Part shown: positions 4,016 through 43,506 of the stretch, piece after piece
How positions within the stretch are numbered: position 1 is the stretch's first letter
How the letters are laid out: each line of letters begins with the position of its first letter
NCBI GenBank assembly: GCA_002269645.1
Contig: NIVC01002665.1
Span: 1-64,000 of the forward strand
Length of the DNA stretch: 64,000 bases
From: Macrostomum lignano
Lineage: Eukaryota
Direction of reading: 5' to 3'
Notes under the pieces: generated by a model
What the model saw: only the letters and a program-made list of their open reading frames with translations
What the model was told of the DNA's origin: nothing
The model's database searches: none
Position numbers and translations under genes: made by a program

Positions 4016-4285
4016 TGCATTTTTGTGTCCAAAGCAGCCCTCAGATAATCATATTGAATCAGCAGTTGAGAATAATTCCACAGGACTATCCATCCATTTC
4101 GATCGATTCAACTAGCTCAAGGATTAACCTGTCAAGTGACTCATCAGTCTAATTGGTCTCAGCAGGATTGCTCTCCGGGTGCCTGCCGAGTGAGGAAGCG
4201 CTCCAGAAAATCCGCTCCAGAACTAATTGAATTTGTGCTCCCAGACTCAAATTCAGGTCCCCAATACTTTAGGAATTGCAGACAC

Positions 4286-7305
<3,020 letters not shown>

Positions 7306-7759
7306 TTAGTTTCGTCAATCGGACTCCACAAAAGAGGCGCTATTCAATGTCCGAGGAGTGCCTTGCGAGCATTCCAAACGCTCTGCCGCAATCAATTAAC
7401 ATGGGTTTGCGTCCCCGAGTCCATCGAGGCGAGCCCGGTCTTGACTCAATCTGGCCCGAATCGGTTGATTAGGTTAGCTAATTAATGGAGAAAAGTACAG
7501 AGTTCTCGGGCACTTAGCATCAATCAATTAGGGCGCTGCCGCTTCAGTAAGTACTGGGCATGAACAGCTGAAGCAGAAGACCGCTGCACTCGCTAATGGT
7601 GCAAATTTCGTTGCAAGATGCATCGGCTAGCTAGGAGGCCTTCAGTTTCTGAGAACTAAGCTGGAAATTTCTCAGCTAAGCTTATTATTTTGCCAATGTA
7701 GCAAGTCGACGCTTGATCTGACATCAGCGATATCCATTAACATCAACTAACACCCTGAT

Positions 7760-8330
7760 ATTCGCTGACATCTACTGACATCCGCTCACATCCACAAACA
7801 TCCGTTGACATCCACTTACATTTGCTGAAATTCACTGGCATCTGCTGACATCCGCTGACATCCGCTGACATTTGCTGACATCAACTGGCATCTGCTGACA
7901 TCCGCTGACATCAACTAACATCTACTGACATCCATTGACATCACTGACATTTATTGACATTTACTGATATTCACTGACATTCACTGACATTCACTTACAT
8001 CTACTGACATTCGCTGGCATTCACTAACATTCACAGACATTCACTGACATTTGCTGACATTCACTGACATTCACTAACATTCACTGACATTCGCTGACAT
8101 TCACTGACAGTCACTGACATTCACTAACATTCACTGACATTCACTAACATTCACAGACATTCGCTGACATTCACTGACATTCACTAACATTCACTGACAT
8201 TCACTAACATTCGCTGGCATTCACTAACATTCACAGACATTCACTGACATTCACTGACATTCACTAACATTCACTAACATTCACTGACATTCGCTGACAT
8301 TCACTGACATTCACTAACATTCACTGGCAC
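7760..8330. repeat. 10-bp minisatellite CTGACATTCA
   Basis: Direct reading. Confidence 0.95.
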
Positions 8331-8995
8331 CCTCCGACATCCCTCGATTAGTTATAAAAAGCTTTAAACTTTCAAACTGACTGTATTTCTACGGTACAGT
8401 AAGATTTTACAGGGTCACATTGCCTTCAATCGGCATTCCCAAAAAACACGTTTTCTATTCCGCCTGTGGACTTTCCGAACCAGCTTGCTGTAAGCCTCTT
8501 TAAACAGTCACATTTGGCGCACGCAGTTTTCAACCGTAATTAGACAGGACTGTCGCCTTGAGAAACAAAAGCGCCGAATGGCGAACTGTCACCCCTTAAC
8601 ACCCTCCTCTCCTGAGAACACGGAAGGCCCAGCAGAAAGTGTCCAACAGTTAATTAAAGAACATGACGGCTTCCAGTAGCTGTAGCCATACATTTAAAGT
8701 TTAAATAAATACTTACCTAAGTCAGAAGTACTTTTATGATAATGATGTACTTCTTATTATCCGATTTTCATATTTTCTAACAAGCATTAAAATAATAAAA
8801 TAGCTGATATTATCACTTATCATGTTTCTGACTAGATATCAGCTGTGATTAAGCCAGTTGCACTGATTCAGCAGGCTATCACGTGGCAGTACTGCCAGTA
8901 GCAATGTGTGAGAGATGCATGCATGCATATCGCATAAATCAGGGGTGGGCATAGCCAGAATCTTTCATACTGACGAATGGCTGTGCCTTTTAAGT

Positions 8996-9560
8996 AAGGC
9001 GCCATTTCATTCAAGTAGGCGTCAGATTCATTTGAGTAGGCGCGAGATTCATTAGAGTAAGGCGCCAAATTCATTAGAGTAGGCGCCAGATTCATTTGAG
9101 TAGGCGCCAGATTCATTTGAGTAGGCACCAGATTCATTTGAGTAGGCGCCAGATTCATTTGAGTAGGCACCAAATTCATTTGAGTAGGCGCCAGATTCAC
9201 TTGAGTAGGCGCCAGATTCATTTGAGTAGGCGCCAGATTCATTTGAGTAGGCACCAAATTCATTTGAGTAGGCGCCAGATTCATTTGAGTAGGCGCCAGA
9301 TTCATTTGAGTAGGCGCCAGATTCATTTGAGTAGGCACCAGATTCATTTAAGTAAGGCGCCATTTCATTTGAGTTGGCGCCAGATTCATTTGAGTAGGCG
9401 CCAGATTCATTTGAGTTGGCGCCAGATTCATTTGAGTAGGCGCGAGATTCATTTGAGTAGGCGCCAGATTCATTTGAGTAAGGCGCGAGATTCATTTGAG
9501 TAGGCGCCAGATTCATTTGAGTAGGCGCGAGATTCATTTGAGTAGGCGAAATTTTATTTG
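8996..9560. repeat. 21-bp minisatellite GCGCCAGATTCATTTGAGTAG
   Basis: About 26 tandem copies. Confidence 0.95.
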
Positions 9561-10027: not shown

Positions 10028-10740
10028 TTGCAGCCAGTTCTGTGAGTTTGCAGTTTGTCCTGTGAATCTGCAGCCAGTTCTGTGAATCTGCAGCCAGTTC
10101 TGTGAATCTGCAGCCAGTTCTGTGAATCTGCAGCCAGTTCTGTGAATCTGCAGCCAGTTCTGTGAGTTTGTAGTTTGTCCTGTGAATCTGCAGCCAGTTC
10201 TGTGAATCTGCAGCCAGTTCTGTGAGTTTGCAGTTTGTCCTGTGAATCTTCAGCCTGTTCTGTGAATCTGCAGCCTGTTCTGTGAATCTGCAGCCTGTTC
10301 TGTGAATCTGCAGCCTGTTCTGTGAATCTGCAGCCAGTTCTGTGAATCTGCAGCCTGTTCTGTGAATCTGCAGCCAGTTCTGTGAATCTGCAGCCTGTTC
10401 TGTGAATCTGCAGCCTGTTCTGTGAATCTGCAGCCAGTTCTGTGAATCTGCAGCCTGTTCTGTGAATCTGCAGCCTGTTCTGTGAATCTGCAGCCTGTTC
10501 TGTGAATCTGCAGCCTGTTCTGTGAATCTGCAGCCTGTTCTGTGAGTTTGCAGTCTGTCCTGTGAATCTTCAGCCTGTTCTGTGAATCTGCAGCCAGTTC
10601 TGTGAATCTGCAGCCTGTTCTGTGAATCTGCAGCTTGTTCTGTGAATCTGCAGCCTGCTCTGGGAATCTGCAGCCTGTTCTGGGAATCTGCAGCCTGTTC
10701 TGTGAATCTGCAGTCTGTTCTGTGGATCTGCAGCCTGTTT
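10028..10740. repeat. 20-bp minisatellite TGCAGCCTGTTCTGTGAATC
   Basis: Direct reading; starts a few bases after the 10021 donor. Confidence 0.95.
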
Positions 10741-11167: not shown

Positions 11168-11945
<778 letters not shown>

Positions 11946-15722: not shown

Positions 15723-15891
15723 TAGGCTCTAGCAGCTCAATCGGAAAAAAAGTAATGAGCAGCAAGGGAGACGGCGGTGGCTCCGGCAGCGGTGGCGGTA
15801 GTCGGTGCCAGCCGAAAGACTGGGTGGAGTTGAGCAAACCGCTTCTGTTCTCTGCCGGCTTCTGCGACACCCGGCAACTGCAGGAGAACAG
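15723..15891 (+). CDS. Candidate coding exon (GSSSSIGKKVMSSKGDGGGSGSGGGSRCQPKDWVELSKPLLFSAGFCDTRQLQENR)
   Basis: Open frame ending AAC AG|GTCAGA (phase 2), compatible with the exon at 19675. The 5' boundary is uncertain (weak acceptor, possible homopolymer frameshift near 15701). Confidence 0.35.
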
Positions 15892-15944
15892 GTCAGAACA
15901 ATGAGCACTGCGAATTAGATAGTGGATTTTTCTTGCTTTTAGTT

Positions 15945-16920
15945 GCGTCTCAAATGGCTGGTGTCCAGGATTGGAGTGACTCAACTGGCTGGTGTGTCAC
16001 AGGATTGGAGTGACTCAACTGGCTGGTGTGTCACAGGATTGGAGTGCCTCAAATGGCTGGTGTGTCACAGGATTGGAGTGCCTCAAATGGCTGGTGTGTC
16101 ACAGGATTGGAGTGCCTCAACTGGCTGCATGGTGTGTCACAGGATTGGAGTGCCTCAACTGGCTGCATGGTGTGTCACAGGGTTGGAGTGCCTCAACTGG
16201 CTGGTGTGTCACAGGATTGGAGTGACTCAACTGGCTGGTGTGTCACAGGATTGGAGTGCCTCAAATGGCTGGTGTGTCACAGGATTGGAGTGCCTCAAAT
16301 GGCTGGTGTGTCACAGGATTGGAGTGCCTCAAATGGCTGGTGTGTCACAGGATTGGAGTGCCTCAAATGGCTGGTGTGTCACAGGATTGGAGTGCCTCAA
16401 ATGGCTGGTGTGTCACAGGATTGGAGTGCCTCAAATGGCTGGTGTGTCACAGGATTGGAGTGCCTCAACTGGCTGCATGGTGTGTCACAGGATTGGAGTG
16501 CCTCAACTGGCTGCATGGTGTGTCACAGGGTTGGAGTGCCTCAACTGGCTGCATGGTGTGTCACAGGATTGGAGTGACTCAACTGGCTGGTGTGTCACAG
16601 GATTGGAGTGACTCAACTGGCTGATGTGTCACAGGATTGGAGTGCCTCAACTGGCTGCATGGTGTGTCACAGGATTGGAGTGCCTCAACTGGCTGGTGTT
16701 TCACAGGATTGGAGTGACTCAACTGGCTGGTGTGTCACAGGATTGGAGTGCCTCAAATGGCTGGTGTGTCACAGGATTGAAGTGCCTCAAATGGCTGGTA
16801 TGTCACAGGATTGGAGTGCCTACCTCAACTGGCTGATGTGTCACAGGATTGGAGTGCCTCAACTGGCTGCATGGTGTGTCACAGGATTGGAGTGCCTCAA
16901 CTGGCTGGTGTGTCACAGGA
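15945..16920. repeat. 34-38-bp minisatellite GTGTCACAGGATTGGAGTGCCTCAAATGGCTGGT
   Basis: Direct reading; shares GTGTCACA and GTGCCTCAAATGGC with the 12790-14310 array. Confidence 0.95.
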
Positions 16921-18889
16921 TTTGGCCCTGTAAAAACCATATAAATTTGTTGTAATTAGCTTCCTTCAGCTCTTCATTTCACACCACTTCCAAGTTCTTC
17001 TAGTCTAGAAATCTTTGGCGGCAAAGTGGTTGCTAGTCAAGTAGTCCTTGAAAGTCAGACCTGATTACTGATCTTGAGCTGATGGAGTTGCCTACGCTGT
17101 CTCAATCGCGATTGAGAAAGTTCACTCTGAATTGGAACTGAATTAACTAAACATAATTTCTGGGCACCTTTTTAGCGCAGCAACGAAAGTGGACGATTGT
17201 GGGACTTTAAAGCTATTGAACTCCTGTCAATATGGTACCGTATAGCATCATTATAGTAACTTTATAATGGTTTTATTATTGCAATAGGTAACACTCATTG
17301 CAATGTTTACTGCGCAGCATACAGTATGCTCAATGCATATAAGTTCAGTGTCAAGGTAAGGGCCTACTCCCACAAGCGGATGCTGATAAAGCAGGATGCA
17401 GCTGGCTGCTGCTTCTAAACGAAGAAGACCTGCGGGCTTATCAGTTGGAGAGCGCCCTCCCCCCCTTTTTAGGCGGGCTTCTTTCCTGACGTGAGGCGAG
17501 GCGGAAGAGGCGAAACAAAACTCGAGGGCGTTCAAAGGCCAGGCCACCCATGACTTTGGTTTAGCAACCTGGGATATCCACCCAGCCCTACTGCTCTTAA
17601 TTGGGCTAACATGGCCGAATCACGCAGCCCGAACAAATCCCTACTCTGCGCCTTCCTTCACCTTGTCAGGTCTCCAACTATTCAAGTAAAGTATATGTTA
17701 ACCCCTGAGGAGCATCTTAATGATATTTACCACAGACAGTCTCAGTGCTCGCTGGTAGTGCACTGAATCAATTGGCTTTTGGCCATAGACATCCTCAGCG
17801 AGCGGCTGCCGCAAGGAGTTCTATTATTATGTCAGGTGTTTCAATCTCGTTTCAACAGGCGTCTGTATAGGGTTCGTTTAACATGGATTTTTAGGTTTTC
17901 ATCGGCTGTGAAACAAATCATGGTTGCATCGGTTTTTATTATTATACAAGCACCAAACTTTTATGGCTGTCTTACTGCCGCATTCAAACTCCAAAGGAAT
18001 GTCACAACGACTCACAATTTGCTTGTAAATTTAAGTCTATCTATCTATTGTACCTGTGGCCTTTTTGCCTCACGGGCCAACAACAATGCAGTGCTAGTTT
18101 ATAGCTCTAGACCTATATATTTAAGATCCACTAACTGAGCGGTAGAGAAGTCATGAAAAGTGGTTGATACAACGAACTGTCTATGGCCAAACCTCTATCA
18201 ACTGCCCGGACATTTCTAATGTTATTTATGAATGAAATTTATAGAAAGCAAAAAATTCTTTGATGAAAAGTGGAATGGGGGGCTTTGTCCCTACCAGCCC
18301 CATTCCGGAATGTGCAGAGCAACGACTTTAACTCCACCCCATTCCCAATGGTGCGGTATTGATTATATATGTCTATGGTAAAAACTTAGAAAAGACAAAT
18401 ATTCCCTGCTATATGTTTATTTCAGCGTCAAAAAAGATGATGTGATTTTAAAGCGCTAAATCTTGCGTTCAACAATCTTTTCACTCTGCCTGGTCAACTG
18501 CCTGCTTCTATAGGCTACCGGCAGCTGTACTTTTATCATAGCGGATAGGGGCGAGTTTAATCAGTCCACCAAAATCTTCTCAAACTGCCATCATTCTTAT
18601 CTCCTAGCTTGGCCGCAGCCGTACCAGCAGCAATAATATGCTGCCGCAGCTGGGCAGAATCCTTGCAAAGCTTCAACTTGGCTCGCCTGAGCAAAATCAA
18701 TCTTATTCAAAATCTTCTTATAGAATCGAATTATTCGAAGCGACAGTCTGCTCGGTATAGCAGCAAATTGGATGCAACTTGAGCGGTTGCGGAGGTGACT
18801 GTAGAGGCTACAGGATTGATTGAATTACAGTTAAAGTAAGCCTATATTTAAGGAGTACTCAGGTTGGAGGCGAGCCATCAAAATAAAAG

Positions 18890-19610
18890 GGGCGCCTCTC
18901 AGGATGAGTAGAGGGAGAAGGATAGAGGGAGGGGCGCTATCGGGATAAATGGAAAGGCGCCATTAGGATAGAGGAAAAGGCGCCATCAGGATAGAGGAAA
19001 AGGCGCCATCAGAAAAGAGGAAAAGGCGCCATCAGGATGGAGCGAAAACGCCATCAGGATAGAGAGAAAGGCGCCATCAGGATAGAGGGAAAGGCGCCAT
19101 CAGGATAGAGGGAAAGGCGCCATCAGGATAGAGGGAAAGACGCCATCAGGATGGAGCGAAAACGCCATCAGGATAGAGGGAAAGGCGCCATCAGGATAGA
19201 GGGAAAGGCGCCATCAGGATAGAGGGAAAGGCGCCATCAGGATAGAGGGAAAGACGCCATCAGGATAGAGGAAAAGGCGCCATCAGGATATAGGGAAAGG
19301 CGCCATCAGAATAGAGGAAAGGCGCCATCAGGATAGAGAGAGAGTGGCGCCATGGATAGAGGAAAAAGCGTCATCAGGATAGAGGAAAAAGCGCCATCAG
19401 GATAGAGGGAAAGGCGCCATCAGGATAGAGGGAAAGGCGCCATCAGGATAGAGGGAGGAGCGCCAATAGGATAGAGGGAGGAGCGCCATCAGGATAGAGG
19501 GAGGGGCACCATCAGGATAGAGGGAGGGGTGCCATCAGGATAGAGGGAGGAGCGCCATCAGGATAGAGGGAGGAGCGCCATTAGGATAGACAGAGGGGCG
19601 CCATCAGGAA
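18890..19610. repeat. 23-bp minisatellite GGCGCCATCAGGATAGAGGGAAA
   Basis: Direct reading. Confidence 0.95.
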
Positions 19611-19674
19611 AGTATCAGAAAGCAGTTAAGAATCAGCCTTTTCATCGTCAATCCATTCCCCAACCCCGCGGCAG

Positions 19675-19871
19675 ATTCTCGGCCGTGGCCATCGAGATGC
19701 TGCGGGAACAGGAGGACCGCGACCTGCATCCGTACGGCCGGGGCGGCCGCTTCGAGGGCGTGCTGTACTCTCGCCGGGTTAAAGTGCAAGTGGACCACGC
19801 CAAATTCCTGGCTTGGATAGTGTTTGCCGGGTTCATCCTGCTCACTTCTGGAGCAATCATCATTCTGGCCG
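19675..19871 (+). CDS. Candidate coding exon with a transmembrane helix (FSAVAIEMLREQEDRDLHPYGRGGRFEGVLYSRRVKVQVDHAKFLAWIVFAGFILLTSGAIIILA)
   Basis: Pyrimidine tract plus GCAG acceptor ending at 19674; phase 2/1; hydrophobic run FLAWIVFAGFILLTSGAIIILA; donor GTTCGT is weak. Confidence 0.55.
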
Positions 19872-20334
19872 GTTCGTGTTGCCATGCGATTTTAAGGCGC
19901 TAATTGATTTTTTCGAAAATCACACGATATCCCAGTATCCATGGAGACAATTCGAGCAGCCTTTGCAGAGCCCCAATAGCCATGCACTTTTCCTAATAAG
20001 TTCTGGTAAACAGACCAACCTTTTGGGCCAAGTTGAGTTTTTTAGCTTGATAGAGTGCTGAGTGCATGCTTTTGAGCATGACAGGTGCAATAAATCTCCT
20101 CTACCGCAGTTCGCCCGAATTACCAAACAAGAGCTAATCTAGCTCGTACAATAGTTTGCATTAGAGTTACCATGAGATCAGGCCGCACAGACAAGCGCGT
20201 GTGCTCATTCATGGCTCCAGAAAGTTAATGCAAAAGTTCCCCGTGAATAAGAACACACATGTACTTCCATATTTCCTATCTCAAGGCAGAAATTACTGAA
20301 CTAGCAACCTACAGTTTGAATCACCAGGCCAGCA

Positions 20335-20750
20335 GCACCAAGCTGGCAACCCTCAGGGTTAACAGCAACCCCTAGCTGGCAACCCTCAGGACTATCAGCA
20401 ACCCCTCCGCTGGCAACCCTCAGGGCTAGCAGCAACCCCTAGCTGGCAACCCTCAGGACTAGCAGCAACCCCTAGCTGGCAACCCTCTGGGTTAGCAGCA
20501 ACCCCTAGCTGGCAACCCTCAGGACTATCAGCAACCCCTCCGCTGGCAACCCTCAGGGCTAGCAGCAACCCCTAGCTGGCAACCCTCAGGACTAGCAGCA
20601 ACCCCTAGCTGGCAACCCTCTGGGTTAGCAGCAACCCCTAGCTGGCAACCCTCAGGACTAGCAGCAACCCCTAGCTGGCAACCCTCAGGACTAGCAGCAA
20701 CCCCTCCGCTGGCAACCCTCAGGACTAGCAGCAACCCCTCCGCTGGCAAA
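20335..20750. repeat. 33-bp minisatellite GCTGGCAACCCTCAGGACTAGCAGCAACCCCTA
   Basis: Direct reading. Confidence 0.95.
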
Positions 20751-20823
20751 CCTTTGTACAAGCATTCAGTGTTATTTATCTATTTAACTTGGCCAAAGCT
20801 CGATGGGCGCATTAAAATTGCAG

Positions 20824-20930
20824 AGATGGAGCGAAGGCAGAAGACCCTACAGCACCAACAACTGCTGGCCTCCGTGACTCAGACGCCGGCCCTGTTGGCA
20901 ACAGCGGGAAACGGGAGCGGAGCGCCATAG
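20824..20930 (+). CDS. Candidate terminal coding exon (EMERRQKTLQHQQLLASVTQTPALLATAGNGSGAP*)
   Basis: TTGCAG acceptor; phase 1 matches the 19871 donor; TAG at 20928-20930; AATAAA at about 21064. Confidence 0.45.
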
Positions 20931-21366
20931 CAACAGGGGGCAGTTGCAATTCGAAAGCCGCCACCGGTCAGTAAAAATGTCGCCCAAAATTTACGCTGTA
21001 TGTACATGCGTATAAATTGTCCCTGGATAATGTATATAATAATGTACAGTCGGTTAATACAAAAATAAACGGCTAAACATTTGTTTTCGATCAAATTTAA
21101 TCAACTAAACAATAATGGTACGTTTACAGCTTGCATATTTTCACAAAACTAACCGGCATCAGCGATTAGGAGAAGAAAAACTGCAACAGTTGCAGGCTTG
21201 TCTTTTATTCGAGATTTAGAAAACTCGTAAAAAAACACAAATATAAACAAACATTTCAACTGACAAATCAACTGACACTCTAGCTAATTAGAGCGGTAGA
21301 TGTTTTACAGGCGCGAAAATTCGAAAAAATGCTGAGCGTCTAGTGCCAGTATGCTGTTAGGGTGTT

Positions 21367-21700
21367 TGGCTACCGACCAGCTTGGCTACCTACCAGCTTG
21401 GCTACCAACCAGCTTGGCTACCTACCAGCTTGGCTATCTACCTACCAGCTTGGCTACCTACCAGCTTGGCTACCTACCAGCTTGGCTACCTACCAGCTTG
21501 GCTATCTACCTACCAGCTTGGCTACCTACCAGCTTGGCTATCTACCAGCTTGGCTACCTACCAGCTTGGCTACCTACCAGCTTGGCTACCTACCAGCTTG
21601 GCTACCTACCAGCTTGGCTACCTACCAGCTTGGCTACCTACCAGCTTGGCTACCTACCAGCTTGGCTATCTACCAGCTAGGCTTCCTACCAGCTTAGCTT
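21367..21700. repeat. 16-bp minisatellite TACCAGCTTGGCTACC
   Basis: Direct reading. Confidence 0.95.
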
Positions 21701-21799
21701 GTAAACGTAAAAATATGAAGAACTCCAACACATTAAAATCGAGAGCCTATACCCCAGAATTACAGCTAATAAGCTGGCAGACTCTCCAGTTTAAAGTTG

Positions 21800-22516
21800 T
21801 CAATACAAGCCTTCGACTGGCCGGCTGCCGTACAGCAGACGCCAGGACGACGGCAGAGGCCGTCCAGGTACCGGCGCCAGGCCCGGCTGTCCGAGAATGG
21901 CGGCCACAGCTTCGGCCAACTGTCCGGCGTGTCCGGAATTGTCGCCCTCGGAGCAGAACAGGCAGGCCAAAGCCGTGCCAGTCGGGCGCGAGTCGGCGGC
22001 CAGCCGGCGGAACAGCGGCCCGGCCAGGCCGACGCCGGAGAGGCGACGCTCCGGCTCTAGCGACTCGAACTCGAGACCTTCTGGCGCGGGATTCGGCCAA
22101 CCGGGCGAGCCGGCCAAGCCAAGCGACGGGCAGCTGGGCTCCCGCCTAGACGAGTCCCATGCGCTGGCTAGCAGCAGCACGCGGGCGAAGCCGCACTCGG
22201 CGATGAGGTTGCAGGCCTCGTCAAGGAAGCGCCGCCTTCGACAGGCCAGCACGGGGGAGCGCAGCTGCAGCACAACGATGCGGCGCTGCTCGCTCTCCCA
22301 CAGTTCGGCGGCTGTGCAGGGCGGCCCGCCGAACGGGCCGGGGCCGCACACCGGGGTCAGCGAGGCGCTGTGCCAGTAGCCCACCGAGTACAGCCGGCCG
22401 GAGCTGATGATCAGGTCGGCAGCCAGCTGGCCAACGTTGCCGACTGACACGCTAGGCAGCACGCAGGTGTAGTCGGACCATTTGCCCGGCCCGATGGACT
22501 TGTCTGACAGCACCAG
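21800..22516 (-). CDS. PSMG2: Proteasome assembly chaperone 2 (PAC2); single exon with no ATG of its own
   Basis: Family motifs PSVSVGNVGQLAADLII, VLQLRSP, LFCSEGDN and C-terminal PSSWRLLYG. The ORF starts right after acceptor CCGCCCGCAG (22517). There is an in-frame TAG 8 codons upstream and no Met in the whole ORF. Confidence 0.9.
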   Translation of the reverse strand: MVLSDKSIGPGKWSDYTCVLPSVSVGNVGQLAADLIISSGRLYSVGYWHSASLTPVCGPGPFGGPPCTAAELWESEQRRIVVLQLRSPVLACRRRRFLDEACNLIAECGFARVLLLASAWDSSRREPSCPSLGLAGSPGWPNPAPEGLEFESLEPERRLSGVGLAGPLFRRLAADSRPTGTALACLFCSEGDNSGHAGQLAEAVAAILGQPGLAPVPGRPLPSSWRLLYGSRPVEGLY

Positions 22517-22534
22517 CTGCGGGCGGGCGGCGAC

Positions 22535-22668
22535 AAGCTAACAGCTGACCCTACTGAATAGCAACAAGCAAACAGCTGACCCTACAGCATAGGAACAAGC
22601 AAACAGCTGACCCTACAGCATAGGAACAAGCAAACAGCTGACCCTACAGCATAGGAACAAGCTAACAG
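22535..22668. repeat. About 31-bp tandem repeat, about 4 copies (AAGCAAACAGCTGACCCTACAGCATAGGAAC), between CWC22 and PSMG2
   Basis: Direct reading. Confidence 0.9.
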
Positions 22669-22873
22669 TCCCGCTTTATAATACGCTCGTAAAAAATCAT
22701 GAATATACATAGAAAACATTCAATAATTGGAAACGCAACGAAGTTGGTGCAAAGGCGGCACAATTGAAGCCACGTGTATTTAGCCGGGCAAATTTATAAC
22801 AACATGAATATGAATTTAATTTACAAGCACATTACCAGTTATGAAGCGGTGCTAAACATAGTAGGCAGTTCTT

Positions 22874-22879
22874 TTTATT
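22874..22879 (-). promoter_or_regulatory. Putative poly(A) signal of CWC22
   Basis: AATAAA on the minus strand about 17 nt after the CWC22 stop. Confidence 0.55.
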
Positions 22880-22895
22880 AAAAAATGAAATCAGC

Positions 22896-25800
22896 CTATC
22901 GGCGACTTCCTCGTTCGCTTCGATCGCCGACAAGGCGAACTTCGCTACGGATCTGCGTCCCTCGGCGATTATCGCCGTTCCTATTATCATCGACAGGTCG
23001 CCGACGCTCGACTGAGTTGCGACGGGATCGATCGTGGCTGTGGTCTCCGACATCCCGACGATGCTGATCGTTGTTGTCGCGCTTGTCCGAGGCTCGCCGA
23101 CTATCTCGACTGTCGCGACTTGGCCGACGAGATTCATCGCCGTCGTCACGTTCATAGTCGCGGTCTCGATCGCGACCGCTGCCTCGCCGCCTCTCCGACT
23201 GCTTATCAACAGCCGCGTCCGACTGTCGGCTGTGTGGGATTAGAAAAAAGTACAGGTGGGTTATTGCTGCTTGTATAACCTACTGGCGAGTAGCGAGAAT
23301 AGCACATCAAGCTTTAATAGTACGAGTATCTAATAATAATAATTGATTACACCTTCCTTTATGGCCAGATGTGCAACCGACAGCTCAACCGCAGCTATTG
23401 CGCGGCGCATCTGAAGGCTGCCTACGGCTGTTCAGTCCAAGGACTGGGGGGTCGCCACACACCCCCTCAATTACCCCAGCTAATGCTGGCACCCATTTTA
23501 CAGCTGGGTGAACTGAAGCAATGCAGATTTAAGTGTCTTGCTCAAGGACACAAATAGTTTCGATTGGGATCGGGAATCGAACCCCGACCTTTGTAATGAG
23601 TCCGACGCTCTAACCACTAGGCTAAAACCCCCTATAATAGTGCACTTTAAATAGTGTACTAATGATAAAACTAAAACGAAAGTTGAATCTAAGTAAAGGA
23701 TATTTCCATAAGATTTACACCAGAATTAGGGACAAGTCCGGGCCGCTGCACATTCTGTGTGAGTGTGGGGATATATATAGTTAACAGCTTACCCATGCCG
23801 CTGCCTGCCTTCATCAGTAGGTGCCGCAGCCTCTTTCGGCTCCTGCTTGATTGATCGGCTGGCCCGTCCGCTACTCCGCTTCCGTCTAGCTGACGCCTCA
23901 TCATCCGAGTCTGAGTCAGAATCAGAGGACGATGACGAAGACGAACTGCTACTAGAAGAGGAAGACTCTGAGGAATCAGACTCCTCAGCCTTGGGCTTTG
24001 GTGCAGTCTCGTACCACTGGCGCAGCGGCAGGGTGACTCCGTTGAGGCCGATGCTCTTGAAGTAGTTAATCGAGAAGCGGGTATTGCGCGGATGATCCCG
24101 CGGGAACAGGCCCTCGAAGAATGCCTGCAGAGTGCAGTCGGCGAAGCGCTGGGAGAGCCTCTCCAAGCCCATGTGCTCGGCCAGGTCTTGGAACAGGATC
24201 TTCAGAAATATCCTACTAGAAGACGTTGTGCCCTGCTCAGTGAGCTGCACGCACTGCATCACGCCCCACGAGATTGAGTCAGTGTGCAACAGGTGAGCAA
24301 AGAATCTGGCCACATTGCGCAGCTTCATCGTCTCCAGCCTGTGAATAGTATTATACTGCTCAGTGAAGATCCTCTCATAGTGCTGCACGTAGGCTCTGTC
24401 TAATTGGCAGAATCTCTGCGCCATCAATCCGTAGAATTTCTCGTAGGTGCGCAGCTGGGCGCAGCAGTCCAGAATCATGCTGGCCAGTTCGGCATCCTCG
24501 CCAGGCCGCAGCTGGATGCGCCGGAGCTTGTGGGCCGCCTCCTCGTAGTCTAGGCTGCTCTGCACAGTCAGGTAGATGGTCTTGCGCAGCTGCACTAGCT
24601 GGGCCTGGGTCTGGTCGATGGCCGGCTTAGCCGCCGCCGCCTCCGTATCTGCGCCTTCGCCGGCTTCGTTGTCGTCTTCGCTTTCGCTGCCGTCGCTGCT
24701 GTCGCTGCCACTGTCGCTGCTACTGTCGTCTCCGTCGCCGAGCAGCTCCCGTTGGATAGCCTTGTATTCGTCCTCGTGGGTGAGATAGTCCGGATCGTAG
24801 CGGAATACATTCAGCGCCTGCTCAGTGTCGTGCTCATCCTCCAGGCTGAGCAGGTGAGTCACCTGGTCCTCCTCTTCCACTAGGTCTAGGGCCTCCTGGA
24901 TTGATGGGTACTGCTTGAACTCGTCCTGGCGGACCTGCGAGATTAGAAATTAAAAAACAGTTGATGCTGAAATCACTACTGACATATCATTACAATAGTA
25001 ATAACAATAGGGCAGAATTATAATGATAACTTAAATGATTTATACGATGCAAACTTGTTCATTTTTGCATACACTTGTCTCATACTACAATTGCACATTT
25101 TGTTTAGATGGCTACTTTTAGATTGTCTATATGGTTTGTACTACTTGCTTTCTTCACCCCAAGAGTAGGCTCAATGCGTATTTTTTTTGCCCTGCGACTG
25201 TCATACAGAGAGTGCGAATGAGCATTCTGGGTGATATTCTGTGTAATCAGCTACCTATATCAAAAACAGGTGGCATCGGGACTGAAGACACTCAGAACCG
25301 GTAAGACAGACAACACCGGTGCAAAAAGACACGACTTTACTAAAAGGTTCAAGGCACCATTGCTGAGACAAAGAGAGCCGATACTAGAAGATAAATAGCA
25401 CCGGTACGAGCGTACTAAAATATGAGTTGCATGGTCGCATCGAATGAAAGAAAAATACCATAGTATCAGTAGTGAAAGACAGGTAACACCGGAACCCCGC
25501 CCCTATAATATAAAGACACCGGGACAGGTACTAGAACCGGTACTAAATATCACCCATCACAGGTACTAAAAGACAAGGTAGCACTGATGCACAGCGAGCC
25601 TCACCTGAAACAGAGTCTCAATCATGTACTGGACTCGCTTATCCAACGCGGCCTCGTGCAAGATGCCCCGCAGCTGATCGAAGATCATGCGCAGTCCTCT
25701 TGGTGCAGTCTCCAACAGTCTGGCGCCGACCTCCTTAAGGAAGCCGACTGCAATCTCAACGGAGCCGTCCGTCGGCCTGTTGAGCAGCAAGGCTAGAATT

Positions 25801-26342
25801 TCCAGAGCCAGAACCTCGTGAGCAACTCGCTGGTTGATGAGGTGAGCCAGAAAAGTGCAAGAATTCAAACAAGTCTCTTTATTGTTTCGCCGAAAAGCCT
25901 TTTTCAACTCCTGTATGAGGCGTTTCAAGGCTAGTTCGCCAATCTGCGGAAATCTAGTATTGACAACGGCCACTAGGCCGGCAAAGACGGGCGTGAACAC
26001 AGGTGAGGTGGCCTGATTGGTCATCAGAGACCGGATGAACAAGCCCCGGCCTCTGACCAGATTCTCCGATAGTAATTGGCGAACAATATTAGGCAGATTG
26101 GTCACATTAGTCATGTTAATTAGGCTATTAAGAGTTTTCTTAAGCGCCTCCCAGGCCACCCGCTGGTATTGCTCGCTAGACTTGTCGGACATTGAGGCCT
26201 GCATTGCGCGCAGTTTAGCTGGAGGTATATAGGCCCCGCCAGTTCGGGTCAGCAGGTCATCGTTTGCTCGTTTGCGACTGGACCCCTCGGCTGGCGCCTC
26301 TGACGGGGCCGGCTGCTCCACGGGTGCTGATTCTGCAGACAT
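22896..26342 (-). CDS. CWC22: Pre-mRNA splicing factor CWC22 (MIF4G + MA3 domains, R/D/S-rich tail), 737 aa
   Basis: join(complement 26342..25605, 24934..23793, 23229..22896) = 2214 nt with GT-AG introns in phases 0 and 2. Motifs [77 protein letters not shown]. Confidence 0.95.
23331..23630 (-). mobile_element. tRNA-derived SINE family A with MIR-like CORE domain, in CWC22 intron 2
   Basis: Minus strand: A-box TAGCCTAGTGG, B-box GGTTCGATTCC, then TGTGTCCTTGAGCAAGACACTT...CTTCAGTTCACCCAGCTGTAAAATGGG and an (ATT)n tail. Second copy at 53433-53783. Confidence 0.85.
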
Positions 26343-29300
26343 CCGGGCTGTTTGGTGTTGCTGGAATCGTTTTGTTTGAAATTTTAAGCAGAATCACACT
26401 GCTATTTGGCATCTTTGGGTTCAAATTGGAACCCTTTACATTGTTTAACCTCTTTGAGCCATAGAAGTTGTAAAAGTTTGTATGCCTACAAATTACTCAA
26501 ATTTGAAAATCGATAGAAAAGTCCTAAAGTCTCAATAATTATAACTCCAATAATCATGAACTTCCAGCTTGGAAAATCTGGGTGCCAATTTGGCATCTGG
26601 GATTCACATTGAGGATACCAACATTAAAATTGACATGTATAGGCACACAATATAACAGAAAATGTAGACTAAAGGAGAGGTCAATGTCATTTCATGAGCC
26701 AACTATAACACAAGAAACCTAGGGCTCTAGAGACAAACTAAAAATTGGCATTTAAAACACATTTTAGCTTATATTGTTATATCTATAAATAAGCCTGACC
26801 TATTGCAAGATAGCAAGGTTTGATTAAGACCAATTTTGTAACATATCCAAGGCTATGCATAGCTGTTACAGGGCAGAGACTTTAAGGAGCCACAATTCTT
26901 ATCCTATAATTTTATAACAGCTCAAAGCTATTACCCTATGACCCAAGGTGAAATTGGAATTTGATATTAGATAATATCAATGACAAATAATAAAAGGTTA
27001 AAATTAAAAATATATAGAAACAGGCACAATGCTAGAAATGATTGTATGATGCTATGCTATTATCAAAGCAATATTCTATTATATATTTTGTACTTAAAGT
27101 AAAATTCCTTTTGGTATCATCTATATATACTGTGATATGAATATTTTACTAATCTAGCTAAAACTAACATTCTAATTGTAAGCAAAGATAAATATATTGG
27201 TACCAAATAAATGTATTTTTCATAAGTAGGATAACATACCAAATAAACCTTATAAGCATCGACTATATTATTTATATTAATATTTTAAACCTTCAAGCAA
27301 CACATAGATTGATAGATACAAAGGTATTTATTTCTATTATACTACCTATATGTATCTAGTCAATTTGTTGATTACCAATTTAACTGTTACTAGTTTATTT
27401 CCAAAATAGCTAAATGAGCATTTCATCTGTAGCAAACAAAATCTAAAAATTAAGGGCAAGTTTTTTAAAAATTTGTTTTTTGGCAATTTGAAAGCAATAA
27501 AGTTATAAAGTAAATTTAGTTGAGTTTTAAAAAGTTAGAAACATCTATAAAAGCACAAATTATTCACATATAGCCTTATTTTTGATGATTTGTAAAAATG
27601 GTAAATTAAATTATGACTAAAATGACTAATAAAAATGATAGAAAGGCTGTAATGTATTTATTAACTTTAAGTATCTTATATTACATTCTATAATGCAACA
27701 ACATATTTAACTTCTTTTTAAGGGTCTATCTATTTATCACTTTCAATACCATTGAGAATATGTATTTTGTAGAGTTCAGTTGCAAAAAATACTATATTCA
27801 ACATAGTTTATTATTTAAGCATGCAAATTCCCATAAGGATCAGAAAATTGCATTTTACCTAGCTTCTACTAATGCAATTTAGAAAATTCTTTTTCTTGTG
27901 CATATACGCCACAATGATATATATTTAAGCCTAATTTCATTGTTCTTTGTTGCTTAATAAATACAGTAAGCATCTTATTTGGAAGCAGATTTGGTTTATT
28001 CTTTTTTCTTACATTTTTAGACTTTGCCCTATTAGTATTATGTTGCTTTTTTGATTGCACTTTTAAAAATAGAACATTTTATATAAATAATAGTAAAACA
28101 ACACTTAATAAATAATTATAATGGCAAAATTTTTATACTTAGTGCAAACTAGCAATCTAGAGCCTTTCCTTTGGGGCACCTAATAAGAAGTAACAAAAAT
28201 TATTTAAATAAATCCATCTAACTAAAGCACATTTTTGTAAGAATAATTTTTTTTTCTATATTATAAATCACCTAATTCAAGTAAATTGCCACAGACAAAG
28301 AAGTTTACTATGAATCTCTTTTTTTAAATTAACAAAGACAAAATAAAGCCAAGTGTATATACACACTATTATCTTAGGAGTCATGCATACCAACTGTGCA
28401 CATCTAATGTTAGATATACAAGGCCAATGCAAGCCTAGATTTTTGGGCATATACTACATAATCCAGAATGTGACATTAGATATAGGCCTATACATTTCAA
28501 TATTAGGCCTAGTAACCAGTTTAACATTGGTAAAGAGTAAACAATATGGCCAAGAAAGTTATACATATAGTCTATAGACCTTCACTTTATGAATATGGTA
28601 ATAGCTAGGCCTATCATAATCATAGTTGCAAGCAGAAAACTATCTTGCTAATCTTAATTGATAAAATTTCAGCCTTGCTGAAATAGTAAAGCATTGTTTT
28701 ACTTAATTTTTGTTTTTTATTATAGAGCTACCATTTTTTATATTGTAGGCCCCTATTTGTCTCTTACCAAAATAACTACAAATTGATATTATGAGGTGTA
28801 TCATGTCACTAAATGACCTCTCACTAAATCTTTCATTTTTTACCAAAGGCAAAGTGTGTCTATCAATATCATTGAAACAACTATTTAAGTATTTTTAAAT
28901 AAAATACCTGTCACCAAATGACCTAAACAATATAAGACCAAGATGGACACACCCCAAGATGGCCACAACATTGAATCTCTTTGGCTCTGCTCTCTTTTTA
29001 TCCTTAATTAGCAACATAATAGCTATTTTTATATTATTTGTTATGGCAGTTATGTTTAATCAATCATATTCATAAATACTGATGAAATAGACCTAATAGA
29101 TTTGAAACTAATTACCTATAATATAAAAACTTTAATCTTTTTCAGTGTTTATGCCAATTTATTCCCTATCATTACATTTATCAAATCTATCACTATATAT
29201 ATAGTATCTGTTTATTAAGAAACCATTGCTACTAGTAATGCTATACACAAATTAAGATGAATATACAACAAGGCAAGGTATTTATTTTGTGTTAGGCTAC

Positions 29301-41323: not shown

Positions 41324-43506
41324 ATGACTGAGCAGGATGAGCCACAACATGATGAGTACGGCCTGAGAGATGATCAGCTAGCAGCAATGGAGGAGTTAGA
41401 CAGGCTGCAGACAATCAGCGCTGATGATTGGACTGGTGTGTCAAGCTCTCTTTTTGCCACTATGTGTCCTACTTTCAAAATTTCCTTTGATTTGATGCGA
41501 TTATTAATGCCTAAATAAATAAAAATTCCAGAGGAAGCCGACGATGAATTTCTAAAGGCTTTGCAAGGTGAGCTGAAATACGATTTACTTGAATTTGCTT
41601 CAAGGCAACTTCAAAGTTCCAGAAGATAAAGCTGAAGAACTCCATGCTGGATGTAGAGGGCAGTCAGTTTTTGGAGAATTTAATTGGCCTGAAAAATACG
41701 TTTCAAAATCGACCACCGGTGCCCTTCGCAGAGCCCGGCCCCGACTACGAGGATACCCTGGCCCGGCTCGACCAGCTCAATGCCGAACTGGAGCGTGAAC
41801 CGTCGCCAGAGGAATCCGCGGCCAGGCCGTCACGGGTTCGATTCAGCGCCGAGCTCGTCCAGGTCGCCCCGTCGCCGTCACCACCGACGCAGCTACCGGC
41901 CGAGGACGAGGCCGATTCAGACGATTCGCCGCCTCAGACGCCACCCGAGCAGCGGCCGGAGACCGACAGCGACGACGCTGAGAAATCGACGCCGGATCGC
42001 CAGCAACCAGTGGAGACGGACGGCGGCGGCGACCAGCCGGGCTCAGGGAAGGTGCTTATAGTCAGCGACGGTGGCCAGTACAAGTACGTCGATAGGCGAG
42101 AGGTGGAAGCCGATCAAATCGACAGCGACAGCGACGAAGATCTGGAGCTGAGCGGCCGCGACAGCGAAAGCAACGGGGAGCCGAGCGGCGGTGGCGGCGG
42201 TCCACGCGGCCGGCCGAGCTCGGCGCCGCGGCAGCAACGGCGCGACTCAAACGGCCGCTCGTCAGTCAACGGCAACGGCCGGCCGGGCAGCGCGCGTAGC
42301 AACGGTTGCCAGGACGAGCGGGAGCGGGACAACGAGCTGGCATTCCAGGCCTGGCTGCGGGCCAAGCGGCAGCAGCAGCGGCGGGAGCGGCGAGAGCGGG
42401 AGCGCCGCGAGGAGGCCGAGGCGCGTGAGCGCGCGCAGCGTCAAGACAATGGCGCCGGCTTTGATGCTTGGCTGCGCGCCAAAAGTGAGCAGCAGAAAGA
42501 CGAGAAGGAGCGCCAAGAGGCGGAGCGGCGGCAGCGGCAGCAGGAAGAGCAGGAGCAGCAAGAGCGCCAGCGGAATGGCAAGCCGAGCTTCGAAGACTGG
42601 CTGCAGAGCAAGCGGAAGCAGCAGAAGAAGGAGAAGAAATACCAAGAGATGGAGCGCGAGGAGATGATTGAGCACTCTGAGACGCGCACTTCAAGGCAGT
42701 GCCGGAGGGCTTTCAAGCTGTAAGTGAATTTATTTTATTGCACTTCGAAATTCTTTCCAGAACAAGCATTTGCTAATCCTTAATCCAATGTGACAGGTGC
42801 AAGAGCAGAGAGTACTGACCCAGCTTTGATCCACCAGCCCATGTTGGACAGGTTGCAGCTAAAATTCACTTAGTGAAGCTTAGAAACACTGAGCCGCGTT
42901 AATTCTTGCTGACAGAGTTTTTTAGCTTGCCTACCAATGGGTTCAAATATGTGCCTCAATCCAATGCATAATTGATCTCTGAAGGAGACCCTACCCGGCC
43001 TCCAGCTTCAGGGATGCGTCGTTCAATTTTATTTAGGACAAAATCGATAAGAAATACTCAATGCGACTACTAACAGTAGAAGAGTTGGTTTCTTAATTCA
43101 ATTAAGCGCAAGTATACGTAATACGCAGAGAATGCTGGCATCGGTTTCAGTGACGAGTTGTCAATGTGGGGTGATTTCGGTGTAGAAAACTAAGCACAAA
43201 ACTGTATTTTCTTTTTGCTGTCTGGTAATTTCCTGGTTTGCATTTTCTTACTCGCAAGCGGCTGGCTGTGAACAAAAATTTGAATCATTTAGAGCCATTG
43301 GACTGTACTCATTCAAAACCCGTTAATTCTCTGCCAGGTGGCTCCGTCGCAAGGAAGAGCAGAAACTATACGAGGAGATGTGCGAGCGACAGCGGGCCCG
43401 CGTGACCCAGCTGGCCATGCGCCGGTCAAGGAAGTCGCAGGCTCTGGCCAATGCTCTACTTGTAGCCAGCTCCTACAAGTACATGGACTACTATGGGTAC
43501 CGCTGA
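41324..43506 (+). CDS. CCDC181: CCDC181-like coiled-coil protein, about 434 aa
   Basis: join(41324..41435, 41532..41567, 41732..42719, 43338..43506), phases 1,1,2. Repeated F-x-x-W-L motifs (AFQAWLRAK, FDAWLRAK, FEDWLQSK, AFKLWLRRK) resemble the CCDC181 C-terminus as I recall it. The 5' exons are less certain. Confidence 0.7.

What the first reader, a model, noticed from the sequence alone, without database searches (positions are those of the whole stretch)
21800..22896. Methionine-free PSMG2 ORF behind CWC22: candidate operon where the spliced leader donates the start codon
Seen: the 238-codon PSMG2 ORF has no Met. It begins in phase 0 immediately after a CAG acceptor (22517), with an in-frame TAG 8 codons upstream. 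CWC22 ends on the same strand only 379 bp away, with AATAAA at 22874-22879. I found no convincing ATG exon with a phase-0 donor in the gap. Established: flatworm spliced leaders end in AUG, which can serve as the initiator, and SL trans-splicing resolves polycistronic transcripts. Inference: SL-AUG + CTG GTG CTG gives MLVLSDKSIGPGKWSDYTCVLPSVSVGNVGQL. This places the conserved PxVSVGN about 22 residues from the N-terminus, close to vertebrate PSMG2 as I recall it. A core proteasome chaperone would then depend on trans-splicing to be translated, co-transcribed with a spliceosomal factor.
Basis: partly seen in the sequence, partly recalled or inferred. Interest (0 to 1): 0.82.

Follow-up and report, generated by a model that had tools for sequence, protein, structure and literature searches.

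The report
Start-codon-less PSMG2 gene completed by trans-splicing
In the flatworm Macrostomum lignano, the proteasome-assembly chaperone gene PSMG2 has no ATG and most likely gets its start codon from the spliced leader RNA, a mechanism already known in flatworms, so this is a clean example and not a discovery.

Summary
The window is Macrostomum lignano scaffold NIVC01002665.1. On the minus strand, a 238-codon PAC2/PSMG2 ORF (22516-21803, stop 21802-21800) contains no ATG. It starts in phase 0 right after a pyrimidine-tract CAG acceptor (22519-17), with an in-frame TAG 8 codons upstream. It lies 379 nt downstream of CWC22, whose AATAAA is at 22879-74.

- The M. lignano spliced leader ends in ATG (literature).
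- Adding one Met makes the N-terminus match orthologues without a gap (MLVLSD.. against MFVPSD../MFISLD.., with the conserved Pro at residue 22).
- The gap has no consensus donor.
- All three assembly copies keep the structure under purifying selection.
- GenBank annotates all three as 5'-partial, starting within 3 nt of the acceptor.

The operon reading meets the published M. lignano criterion (same strand, under 1 kb after subtracting repeats). Co-transcription is not shown, and a promoter in the gap is not excluded. No RNA-level data could be reached.

Use of the SL AUG as initiator has been known since Cheng et al. 2006, and Macrostomum authors acknowledge it. This is a new member of a known kind, of low to moderate interest.

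The parts
26361..26366 (-). TTCCAG trans-splice acceptor in front of CWC22. It matches the published [T/C]TNCAG motif.
   Evidence: One search shows the sequence. The GenBank CDS of CWC22 starts at this acceptor or 3 nt after it in all three copies. The motif is from PMC8629364.
25605..26360 (-). CWC22 exon 1 (MIF4G domain). The genomic ATG is at 26342-26340. An SL AUG would be in frame 7 codons before it, with no intervening stop.
   Evidence: The donor is GTGAGG.
23793..24934 (-). CWC22 exon 2 (MA3 domain plus an acidic/Ser-rich tail).
   Evidence: MA3, E 1.6e-24. Splice reconstruction reproduced the annotated product lengths of 742/743/744 aa.
22896..23229 (-). CWC22 exon 3 (Arg/Asp/Ser-rich C-terminus), including the stop TAG at 22898-22896.
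22874..22879 (-). AATAAA poly(A) signal of CWC22, starting 17 nt after its stop codon.
22517..22895 (-). 379-nt intercistronic gap or outron. It is 41% GC and has no GT[AG]AG donor. It contains two TATAAA strings, starting at 22798 and 22680.
22533..22668 (-). 31-bp minisatellite inside the gap. There are 4.4 copies here, about 7 in L001 and about 19 in L002, so the gap is 379/471/843 nt (stop to acceptor) in the three copies.
22538..22540 (-). In-frame TAG, 8 codons upstream of the first PSMG2 codon. It closes the frame upstream.
22517..22534 (-). Predicted SL trans-splice acceptor: the C-rich pyrimidine tract GTCGCCGCCCGCCCGCAG, with CAG at 22519-22517.
   Evidence: It is identical in L001, L002 and L003. 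The annotated 5'-partial CDS starts at 22513.
21800..22516 (-). PSMG2 / PAC2 single-exon ORF: 238 codons with no ATG, followed by stop TGA at 21802-21800. The predicted protein is the SL-encoded Met plus these 238 residues (239 aa).
22648..22719 (-). The only formal alternative: a 24-codon ATG 'exon' (MFSMYIHDFLRAYYKAGLLACSYA) ending at a phase-0 GT (GCT|GTAGGG). Considered and rejected.
   Evidence: It is 33% GC against 70% in the CDS. The GT lies in the first unit of the minisatellite. It has no counterpart in orthologues.
21204..21799 (-). Probable PSMG2 3'UTR. It contains a 16-bp minisatellite (21699-21366). The first AATAAA is at 21209-21204. This part is tentative.

Best explanation
This is the Macrostomum lignano PSMG2 (proteasome assembly chaperone 2, PAC2) gene, a single coding exon with no initiation codon of its own.

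Proposed mechanism. The primary transcript is most likely a CWC22-PSMG2 polycistronic precursor; otherwise it starts in the 379-nt gap. It is cut at the CAG acceptor (22519-22517). The 35-nt spliced leader, which ends in ...UUGCAUG, is trans-spliced onto C22516. The leader's 3'-terminal AUG then sits in frame directly before CUG GUG CUG. It serves as the initiator and gives MLVLSDKSIGPGKWSDYTCVLPSVSVGN... (239 aa). The ORF has no other in-frame AUG, so translating a full-length protein depends entirely on trans-splicing. CWC22, 379 nt upstream, is cleaved and polyadenylated after its AATAAA, and it appears to be trans-spliced itself at a TTCCAG acceptor.

Shown: the gene anatomy, the reading phase, the fit to orthologues, conservation in three copies, and the host's AUG-terminated SL (from the literature).

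Inferred: the SL junction at this site, initiation at the SL AUG, and co-transcription.

My confidence is about 0.85 for the SL-AUG start and about 0.6 for a true operon.
For: 1. The species is M. lignano. The window is identical to NIVC01002665.1 of GCA_002269645.1.
2. The M. lignano SL ends in ATG (PMC8629364). The authors of the Macrostomum genome papers describe that final ATG as a translation start codon (PMC10468722).
3. The ORF is a real PAC2 protein above the Pfam cut-off. It has 682 homologues at E<=1e-3.
4. With one added Met, the N-terminus aligns without a gap to orthologues. MLVLSDKSIGPGKWSDYTCVLPSVSVGN aligns with MFISLDPSLSGDKWEEYTLLIPCVSVGN (P0139) and with MFVPSDQR... (P0007). 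The commonest orthologue start is MFV. The conserved Pro is at residue 22, against a median of 21. The genome therefore encodes the protein from residue 2 onward.
5. There is an in-frame TAG 8 codons upstream and no ATG in the ORF.
6. The gap has no GT[AG]AG donor. An acceptor with no upstream donor is the stated requirement for trans-splicing (PMC8629364).
7. All three copies in the assembly keep CWC22->PSMG2, the identical acceptor and an ATG-free ORF. The window and L001 differ at 7 synonymous and 3 non-synonymous sites, including a synonymous CTG->TTG change in the very first codon.
8. GenBank's RNA-seq-guided models cut transcripts at mapped SL sites (TBONE; PMC5730564). They label all three proteins 'partial' and start them 3 nt after the acceptor. 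CWC22 models show the same 0-3 nt jitter at their own acceptor.
9. The gap is 379 nt, or about 243 nt without the minisatellite. This is inside the published 1-kb repeat-adjusted operon threshold.
Against: - No transcript, SL-junction read, TSS or proteomic evidence could be reached.
- The acceptor hexamer is CCGCAG. It matches the enriched trans-splice motif [T/C]TNCAG at only 5 of its 6 positions: C replaces T at -5.
- The annotated CDS begins at the second codon (GTG) and not the first, so the mapped 5' end is 1-3 nt off the predicted junction.
- The AG of the upstream in-frame TAG (22539-22538) is also a phase-0 acceptor candidate. It would give MLVAARPQLVLSD...
- Two TATAAA strings in the gap (starting at 22798 and 22680) leave room for an independent promoter.
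- The minisatellite varies from 4 to 19 copies, which shows that the spacing is unconstrained.
- About 60% of trans-spliced M. lignano genes are not in operons.
Confidence: 0.8

Rival explanations
1. The start codon comes from the SL, but there is no operon. PSMG2 has its own promoter inside the 379-nt gap, for example at one of the two TATAAA strings. It makes a short outron that is removed by SL trans-splicing. CWC22 is simply a close neighbour.
For: TATAAA strings start at 22798 and 22680 in an AT-rich gap. Most trans-spliced M. lignano genes (about 60%) are not in operons. The gap length varies freely (379/471/843 nt) through minisatellite expansion. The two named PSMG2 copies carry transcriptional-unit names with different prefixes (Mlig003375g1 and Mlig018665g2), so at least one copy was not joined to CWC22 in a single assembled unit.
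Against: A TATAAA string in 41%-GC sequence is weak evidence. The pair meets the published operon criterion (same strand, downstream gene at an acceptor, under 1 kb after subtracting repeats). The 'g2' suffix of one copy is compatible with a second gene in a unit. The authors state that assembled units often break in repeat-rich intercistronic regions.
Confidence: 0.3
2. A cis-spliced 5' exon supplies the ATG. The exon runs from ATG 22719 (or 22710) to 22648. Its donor is GCT|GTAGGG at 22647, and it is spliced in phase 0 to the CAG acceptor. This would add 24 residues (MFSMYIHDFLRAYYKAGLLACSYA).
For: It is the only combination of an ATG, an open frame and a phase-0 GT in the gap. The segment is present in all copies.
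Against: - GTAGGG does not match the species' GT[G/A]AG donor motif.
- The same GT recurs in every minisatellite unit, in changing phases.
- The exon is 33% GC, against 70% GC (GC3 82%) in the CDS.
- It would put the conserved Pro at residue 45, whereas orthologues have it at a median of 21. Without this exon the N-terminus already matches orthologues residue for residue.
- An RNA-seq-guided annotation would then have produced a complete CDS and not a 5'-partial one.
Confidence: 0.04
3. Non-AUG initiation. Translation starts at the CUG (22516) or GUG (22513) of a transcript that is not trans-spliced, or ribosomes ignore the SL AUG.
For: CUG and GUG are the best near-cognate start codons, and both stand at the very start of the ORF.
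Against: An unspliced leader would carry nine upstream ATGs and an in-frame TAG. Starting at CUG or GUG gives MVLSD.. or MLSD.., which is 1-2 residues shorter than the gap-free fit obtained with SL-Met. The SL AUG would be the first AUG on the trans-spliced mRNA.
Confidence: 0.04
4. The gene is a 5'-truncated pseudogene or an annotation/assembly artefact and makes no protein.
For: GenBank labels the product 'partial'.
Against: Three independent copies keep a 238-codon open frame. Substitutions are 7 synonymous to 3 non-synonymous. All 32 invariant family columns are present. The truncation would have to remove exactly one codon. M. lignano needs a PSMG2, and no other copy type was found.
Confidence: 0.02

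Closest known systems
[quoted passage not shown]
   Same: The SL ends in AUG, the acceptor is in phase with the ORF, and there is no genomic initiator. [quoted passage not shown]
   Different: The species differs: a free-living macrostomorph, not a trematode. The gene is PSMG2. The ORF has no AUG at all, so there is no downstream fallback. Here the SL junction is inferred and not sequenced.
M. lignano SL-resolved operons (Ustyantsev & Berezikov 2021, PMC8629364; transcriptional units of Wudarski et al. 2017, PMC5730564)
   Same: Two same-strand genes, with the downstream one starting at an acceptor. The intercistronic distance is under 1 kb after subtracting repeats. The intercistronic region is inflated by a repeat, exactly as those authors describe. 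Both are conserved housekeeping genes, which is typical of trans-spliced genes.
   Different: After subtracting the repeat the distance is about 243 nt, longer than the modal distance of about 100 bp. No precursor transcript was examined here.
slORFs (SL-created ORFs) in nematodes, Oikopleura and trypanosomes (slORFfinder, PMC9851317)
   Same: The leader supplies the start codon of the translated ORF.
   Different: Those mostly use near-cognate NUG codons inside the SL and create novel or alternative ORFs. Here a canonical AUG completes an ancient conserved protein.
PSMG2 / PAC2 proteasome assembly chaperone (Pfam PF09754)
   Same: Full-length PAC2 architecture, with the invariant P.VSVGNVGQL, SEGDN and P.SW motifs.
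   Different: It is divergent: 39% identity or less to anything outside M. lignano. It is shortened in the middle region, 70% GC and Met-free.

Membership tests
SL-AUG-initiated flatworm mRNA (Cheng et al. 2006 class) | The host has a spliced leader whose last three bases are AUG. | tested here: met
   The species was identified as M. lignano. The published SL is CGGTCTCTTACTGCGAAGACTCAATTTATTGCATG (PMC8629364; PMC10468722). No SL RNA gene lies in the window itself, and none is expected there.
SL-AUG-initiated flatworm mRNA (Cheng et al. 2006 class) | A 3' splice acceptor lies immediately upstream of the ORF, in phase 0, with no matching cis donor upstream. | tested here: met
   CAG at 22519-22517 is followed by CTG GTG CTG in frame. 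The 379-nt gap has no GT[AG]AG. The hexamer CCGCAG matches [T/C]TNCAG except at position -5.
SL-AUG-initiated flatworm mRNA (Cheng et al. 2006 class) | No genomic in-frame AUG can give the conserved N-terminus. | tested here: met
   There are zero ATG codons among the 238 codons in all three copies, and an in-frame TAG 8 codons upstream.
SL-AUG-initiated flatworm mRNA (Cheng et al. 2006 class) | The predicted SL-Met protein has an N-terminus matching its orthologues. | tested here: met
   The alignment to P0139 and P0007 is gap-free. The conserved Pro is at residue 22, against a median of 21.
SL-AUG-initiated flatworm mRNA (Cheng et al. 2006 class) | cDNA or RNA-seq reads show the SL joined at this acceptor. 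| not testable with these tools
   No transcript contigs are on record, and the held supplements contain nothing. The only indirect evidence is that RNA-seq-guided GenBank models start 3 nt after the acceptor and are flagged 5'-partial.
SL-AUG-initiated flatworm mRNA (Cheng et al. 2006 class) | Translation actually initiates at the SL AUG. | not testable with these tools
   This needs ribosome profiling, N-terminal proteomics or a reporter assay.
SL-resolved operon (M. lignano criterion, PMC8629364) | Adjacent genes in the same orientation, with no opposite-strand gene between them. | tested here: met
   CWC22 and PSMG2 are both on the minus strand. The gap is 379 nt and holds no credible ORF. 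The arrangement is the same in L001 and L002.
SL-resolved operon (M. lignano criterion, PMC8629364) | Repeat-adjusted intergenic distance below 1 kb. | tested here: met
   379 nt minus the 136-nt minisatellite is about 243 nt. The other copies have gaps of 471 and 843 nt (stop to acceptor) before subtraction.
SL-resolved operon (M. lignano criterion, PMC8629364) | The downstream gene is SL trans-spliced. | tested here: inconclusive
   This is inferred from the anatomy and the annotation. No junction reads were available.
SL-resolved operon (M. lignano criterion, PMC8629364) | A polycistronic precursor transcript exists and there is no internal promoter. | not testable with these tools
   This needs RNA-seq, long-read and RAMPAGE tracks. 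Two TATAAA strings are present in the gap.
PSMG2 / PAC2 (PF09754) | A Pfam PAC2 match above the gathering score, plus the conserved family motifs. | tested here: met
   40.4 bits against a cut-off of 25.8. All 32 invariant columns of the 12-sequence alignment are present, including P22, VSVGNVGQL, SEGDN and P.SW.
CWC22 (upstream gene) | An MIF4G domain followed by an MA3 domain. | tested here: met
   PF02854 at E 3.2e-17 and PF02847 at E 1.6e-24. It is 50-57% identical to animal CWC22 proteins.

The most novel reading that the evidence does not exclude
PSMG2 is an obligately SL-dependent gene. It has no AUG anywhere in its ORF, so trans-splicing acts as an all-or-none licence for its translation. 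It is also transcribed in one unit with the spliceosome factor CWC22. Output of a proteasome-assembly chaperone would then be mechanistically coupled to splicing capacity, for example in neoblasts, where 85% of specific genes are trans-spliced. On this reading, complete loss of genomic start codons would be a selected regulatory state and not a neutral consequence of having an AUG-terminated leader.
Probability: 0.1. Interest if true: 0.5.

Novelty: new member of a known kind. Interest (0 to 1): 0.25.

Why it matters
The locus is an unusually clean case: a conserved single-exon housekeeping gene whose genome copy begins at residue 2 and contains no AUG at all. This has three uses.

1. It explains why GenBank lists all three M. 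lignano PSMG2 proteins as 'partial'. It shows how such models should be repaired, by prepending the SL Met.
2. It offers a compact natural test-bed in a transgenic flatworm model. The cassette (acceptor plus ATG-less ORF) could be used to study SL-AUG initiation and to build trans-splicing-dependent reporters.
3. It illustrates how minisatellites inflate intercistronic spacers.

It does not change what is known about trans-splicing or proteasome assembly.

Tried and rejected
- Transcript evidence. Exact look-ups of the SL-Met protein (239 aa) and of the 238-aa ORF found no transcript contig. The 90% cluster holds only the three GenBank genome-derived proteins.
- Published per-gene tables. The gene ids, PSMG2 and CWC22 do not occur in the held supplements of PMC5816591 or PMC5730564, and PMC8629364 has no held supplement. 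No paper mentions Mlig003375 or Mlig018665, or PSMG2 together with trans-splicing.
- Naming of the upstream CWC22 models, to see whether one is Mlig018665g1. The reconstructed 742/743/744-aa products have the annotated lengths but are not in the protein collection. The CWC22 homology search returned no M. lignano entry. The 'g2' suffix therefore stays a hint only.
- Orthologues from other Macrostomum species or other flatworms, to test whether the ATG-less start and the synteny are conserved. The word-indexed search and the exhaustive search found nothing above 39-42% identity outside M. lignano.
- Cheng et al. 2006 itself is not held. Its content is cited through three papers that summarise it.
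- An SL RNA gene in the window: none. Rfam families: none. tRNAs: none.
- Rejected readings: the cis-spliced ATG exon 22719-22648, non-AUG initiation, and a pseudogene. See the rival explanations.
- The bacterial-type promoter/terminator scan was not used, because it is irrelevant to a metazoan.


Full report
**Where the window comes from.** The PSMG2 ORF is 99-100% identical to three GenBank proteins of Macrostomum lignano, all named 'hypothetical protein BOX15_Mlig..., partial'. One of the three loci (L003, NIVC01002665.1, assembly GCA_002269645.1 = Mlig_3_7) is base-for-base identical to window 28513..15800. Window coordinates therefore equal scaffold coordinates. The other two loci (L001, L002) are paralogous or allelic copies, as expected for this partly duplicated genome (PMC8629364).

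**Checking the observation.** All features are on the minus strand.
- The ORF 22516..21803 is 238 sense codons with no ATG. Its stop is TGA at 21802-21800.
- It is directly preceded by GTCGCCGCCCGCCCGCAG, with CAG at 22519-22517. An in-frame TAG at 22540-22538 lies eight codons before the first CTG.
- The ORF is a real PAC2/PSMG2. It matches Pfam PF09754 at 40.4 bits against a cut-off of 25.8. It matches animal PSMG2 at E 1e-24 to 1e-20. An exhaustive search found 682 homologues at E<=1e-3.
- The upstream gene is CWC22, with MIF4G and MA3 domains (50-57% identity to animal CWC22). I reconstructed its three exons as 26360-25605, 24934-23793 and 23229-22896. This reproduced the annotated product lengths. 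Its stop TAG is at 22898-22896, so the gap is 379 nt. AATAAA is at 22879-22874.
- A Met-free PSMG2 is uncommon. 151 full-length homologues average 4.3 internal Met, and only 3 have none. The expected probability of no Met in 238 residues is about 0.018.

**Is the N-terminus complete apart from the Met?** This is the most informative test available without RNA data. Prefixing one Met gives MLVLSDKSIGPGKWSDYTCVLPSVSVGN. It aligns without any gap to the closest outside relative, MFISLDPSLSGDKWEEYTLLIPCVSVGN (P0139). It also aligns to MFVPSDQR... (P0007) and to the family consensus MFV.... 'MFV' is the commonest start among 151 homologues. The conserved proline of P.VSVGN falls at residue 22, against a family median of 21 and quartiles of 20-24. 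The genome therefore encodes the protein from residue 2 onward. Exactly one codon, the initiator, is missing.

**Where can the initiator come from?**
- The M. lignano spliced leader is a single 35-nt sequence, CGGTCTCTTACTGCGAAGACTCAATTTATTGCATG, which ends in ATG (PMC8629364).
- Flatworm SL AUGs can serve as the initiator methionine. Cheng et al. 2006 established this for S. mansoni. The SL AUG was in frame in 28% of trans-spliced cDNAs, and more than 40 cDNAs required it (summarised in PMC9851317; also PMC12582326, and PMC5832876).
- Trans-splicing the SL to C22516 gives AUG CUG GUG CUG... in frame.
- The gap has no GT[AG]AG donor. An acceptor with no upstream donor in cis is the condition for trans-splicing (PMC8629364).

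**Indirect transcript evidence.** The GenBank models derive from an RNA-seq-guided assembly. In that assembly, transcriptional units were cut at mapped SL sites and ORFs were called with TransDecoder (PMC5730564). A 5'-partial ORF can be called only if the transcript model begins downstream of the in-frame TAG, that is, within 22537-22513. All three copies are 5'-partial and start at GTG 22513, 3 nt after the acceptor. The CWC22 models show the same 0-3 nt offset. They start exactly at their TTCCAG acceptor in L001 and L002, and one codon later in the window copy. The offset therefore looks like boundary jitter and not a different site. This points to an mRNA 5' end at the acceptor, but it is not a junction read.

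**Conservation.** The three copies share the CWC22->PSMG2 arrangement, an identical acceptor tract and an ATG-free ORF. The window and L001 differ at 10 CDS positions, 7 synonymous and 3 non-synonymous. One of the synonymous changes is CTG->TTG in the first codon after the acceptor. This argues for a translated, constrained gene and against a pseudogene.

**Alternatives in the gap.** I enumerated every ATG between the CWC22 stop and the acceptor, with every downstream GT.
- Only the ORF opening at ATG 22719 (or 22710) reaches phase-0 GTs. The best of these is GCT|GTAGGG at 22647.
- It does not match the species' donor motif GT[G/A]AG.
- It lies in the first unit of a minisatellite whose every unit repeats it in a different phase.
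- It would add 24 AT-rich residues: 33% GC, against 70% GC and 82% GC3 in the CDS.
- It would destroy the residue-for-residue N-terminal fit.
- The AG of the upstream TAG (22539-22538) is a second in-phase acceptor candidate, giving MLVAARPQLVLSD.... It is not favoured by the annotation or by the orthologue alignment.
- Non-AUG initiation at CUG or GUG on an unspliced leader would have to pass nine upstream ATGs. It also gives a poorer N-terminal fit.

**The operon claim.**
- Published M. lignano criteria call two adjacent same-strand genes an operon when the downstream one is trans-spliced and the repeat-adjusted distance is under 1 kb. The mode is about 100 bp. The authors note that repeats inflate intercistronic distances (PMC8629364).
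- Here the gap is 379 nt, of which 136 nt is a 31-bp minisatellite (22533-22668, 4.4 copies). The minisatellite expands to about 7 and about 19 copies in L001 and L002. The repeat-adjusted distance is therefore about 243 nt.
- CWC22 has an AATAAA starting 17 nt after its stop. It appears to be trans-spliced itself at TTCCAG (26366-26361). The SL AUG would be in frame 7 codons ahead of its genomic ATG, so CWC22 may also start at the SL AUG as [12 protein letters not shown]....
- The locus thus qualifies as a predicted two-gene operon.
- Co-transcription is not shown. The gap contains two TATAAA strings. About 60% of trans-spliced genes in this species are monocistronic. The two named PSMG2 copies carry different transcriptional-unit prefixes (Mlig003375g1, Mlig018665g2). 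That is compatible both with a broken assembly across the repeat and with separate units.
- I put the operon at about 0.6 and the SL-AUG start at about 0.85.

**Comparison with what is known, and novelty.** Mechanistically this is a member of the class defined by Cheng et al. 2006, inside an SL-resolved operon of the kind catalogued for M. lignano. I found no paper linking PSMG2 to trans-splicing or naming these gene ids. The specific case therefore appears undescribed, and GenBank simply lists the proteins as partial. Two things are mildly notable. The ORF has no AUG at all, so there is no fallback initiation. And the genome copy begins exactly at residue 2 of a universally conserved protein. 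Pairing with a spliceosome factor is probably incidental, because conserved housekeeping genes dominate the trans-spliced and operonic sets.

**Verdict.** It is a new member of a known kind, with interest about 0.25.

**What I could not do.** No M. lignano transcript, SL-read, RAMPAGE or proteomic data are reachable with these tools. No orthologue closer than about 40% identity is available to test conservation of the ATG-less start or of the synteny.

Noticed in passing
window 26340-26366 (minus strand): CWC22 itself starts at a TTCCAG acceptor. The SL AUG would be in frame 7 codons upstream of its genomic ATG (26342), with no stop between, so CWC22 may be made as [12 protein letters not shown].... 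GenBank models for it are also 5'-partial.
   Followed up: partly
window 22533-22668; L001 and L002 equivalents: A 31-bp minisatellite lies in the CWC22-PSMG2 spacer. It has 4.4 copies here, about 7 in L001 and about 19 in L002, so the spacer is 379, 471 or 843 nt. Each unit carries CAG and TAG acceptor-like and GT donor-like strings.
   Followed up: yes
window 21366-21699 and 21204-21209: A 16-bp minisatellite (about 20 copies) begins about 100 nt after the PSMG2 stop. The first AATAAA downstream is about 590 nt after the stop. The 3'UTR therefore probably contains the repeat, or a non-canonical poly(A) signal is used.
   Followed up: no
window about 23400-23600 (minus strand, CWC22 intron 2): The sequence has a tRNA-like B-box (GGTTCGATTCCCGATCC), suggesting a tRNA-derived SINE. 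ARAGORN calls no tRNA, and Rfam finds nothing at gathering threshold.
   Followed up: partly
window 4279-7305 and 11168-11944: A 3-kb (CAGA)n microsatellite (189 x 16 bp) and a 0.8-kb (GTCT)n array lie about 4 kb apart. They are the same repeat on opposite strands. They explain the extreme AT skew (+0.83 and -0.51) and the spurious 840-885-aa ORFs open in all three frames.
   Followed up: partly
window 3689-4011, 7755-8326, 8989-9548, 10029-10739, 20330-20753: Five more minisatellite arrays (periods 22, 10, 21, 20 and 33 bp) show how repeat-dense this M. lignano scaffold is.
   Followed up: no
window 26400-30000: A roughly 3.5-kb AT-rich block (33% GC, against about 50% elsewhere) lies immediately upstream of the CWC22 acceptor. 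It is a candidate outron/promoter region or an AT-rich transposon.
   Followed up: no
window 60988-63318 (-), 54320-55252 (-), 41644-42723 (+): Other protein-coding pieces were seen: a tubulin-tyrosine-ligase-family ORF (PF03133, E 5e-68), a 2OG-dioxygenase N-terminal domain (PF14226, E 3e-18) and a weak CCDC34-like match below the Pfam cut-off.
   Followed up: no
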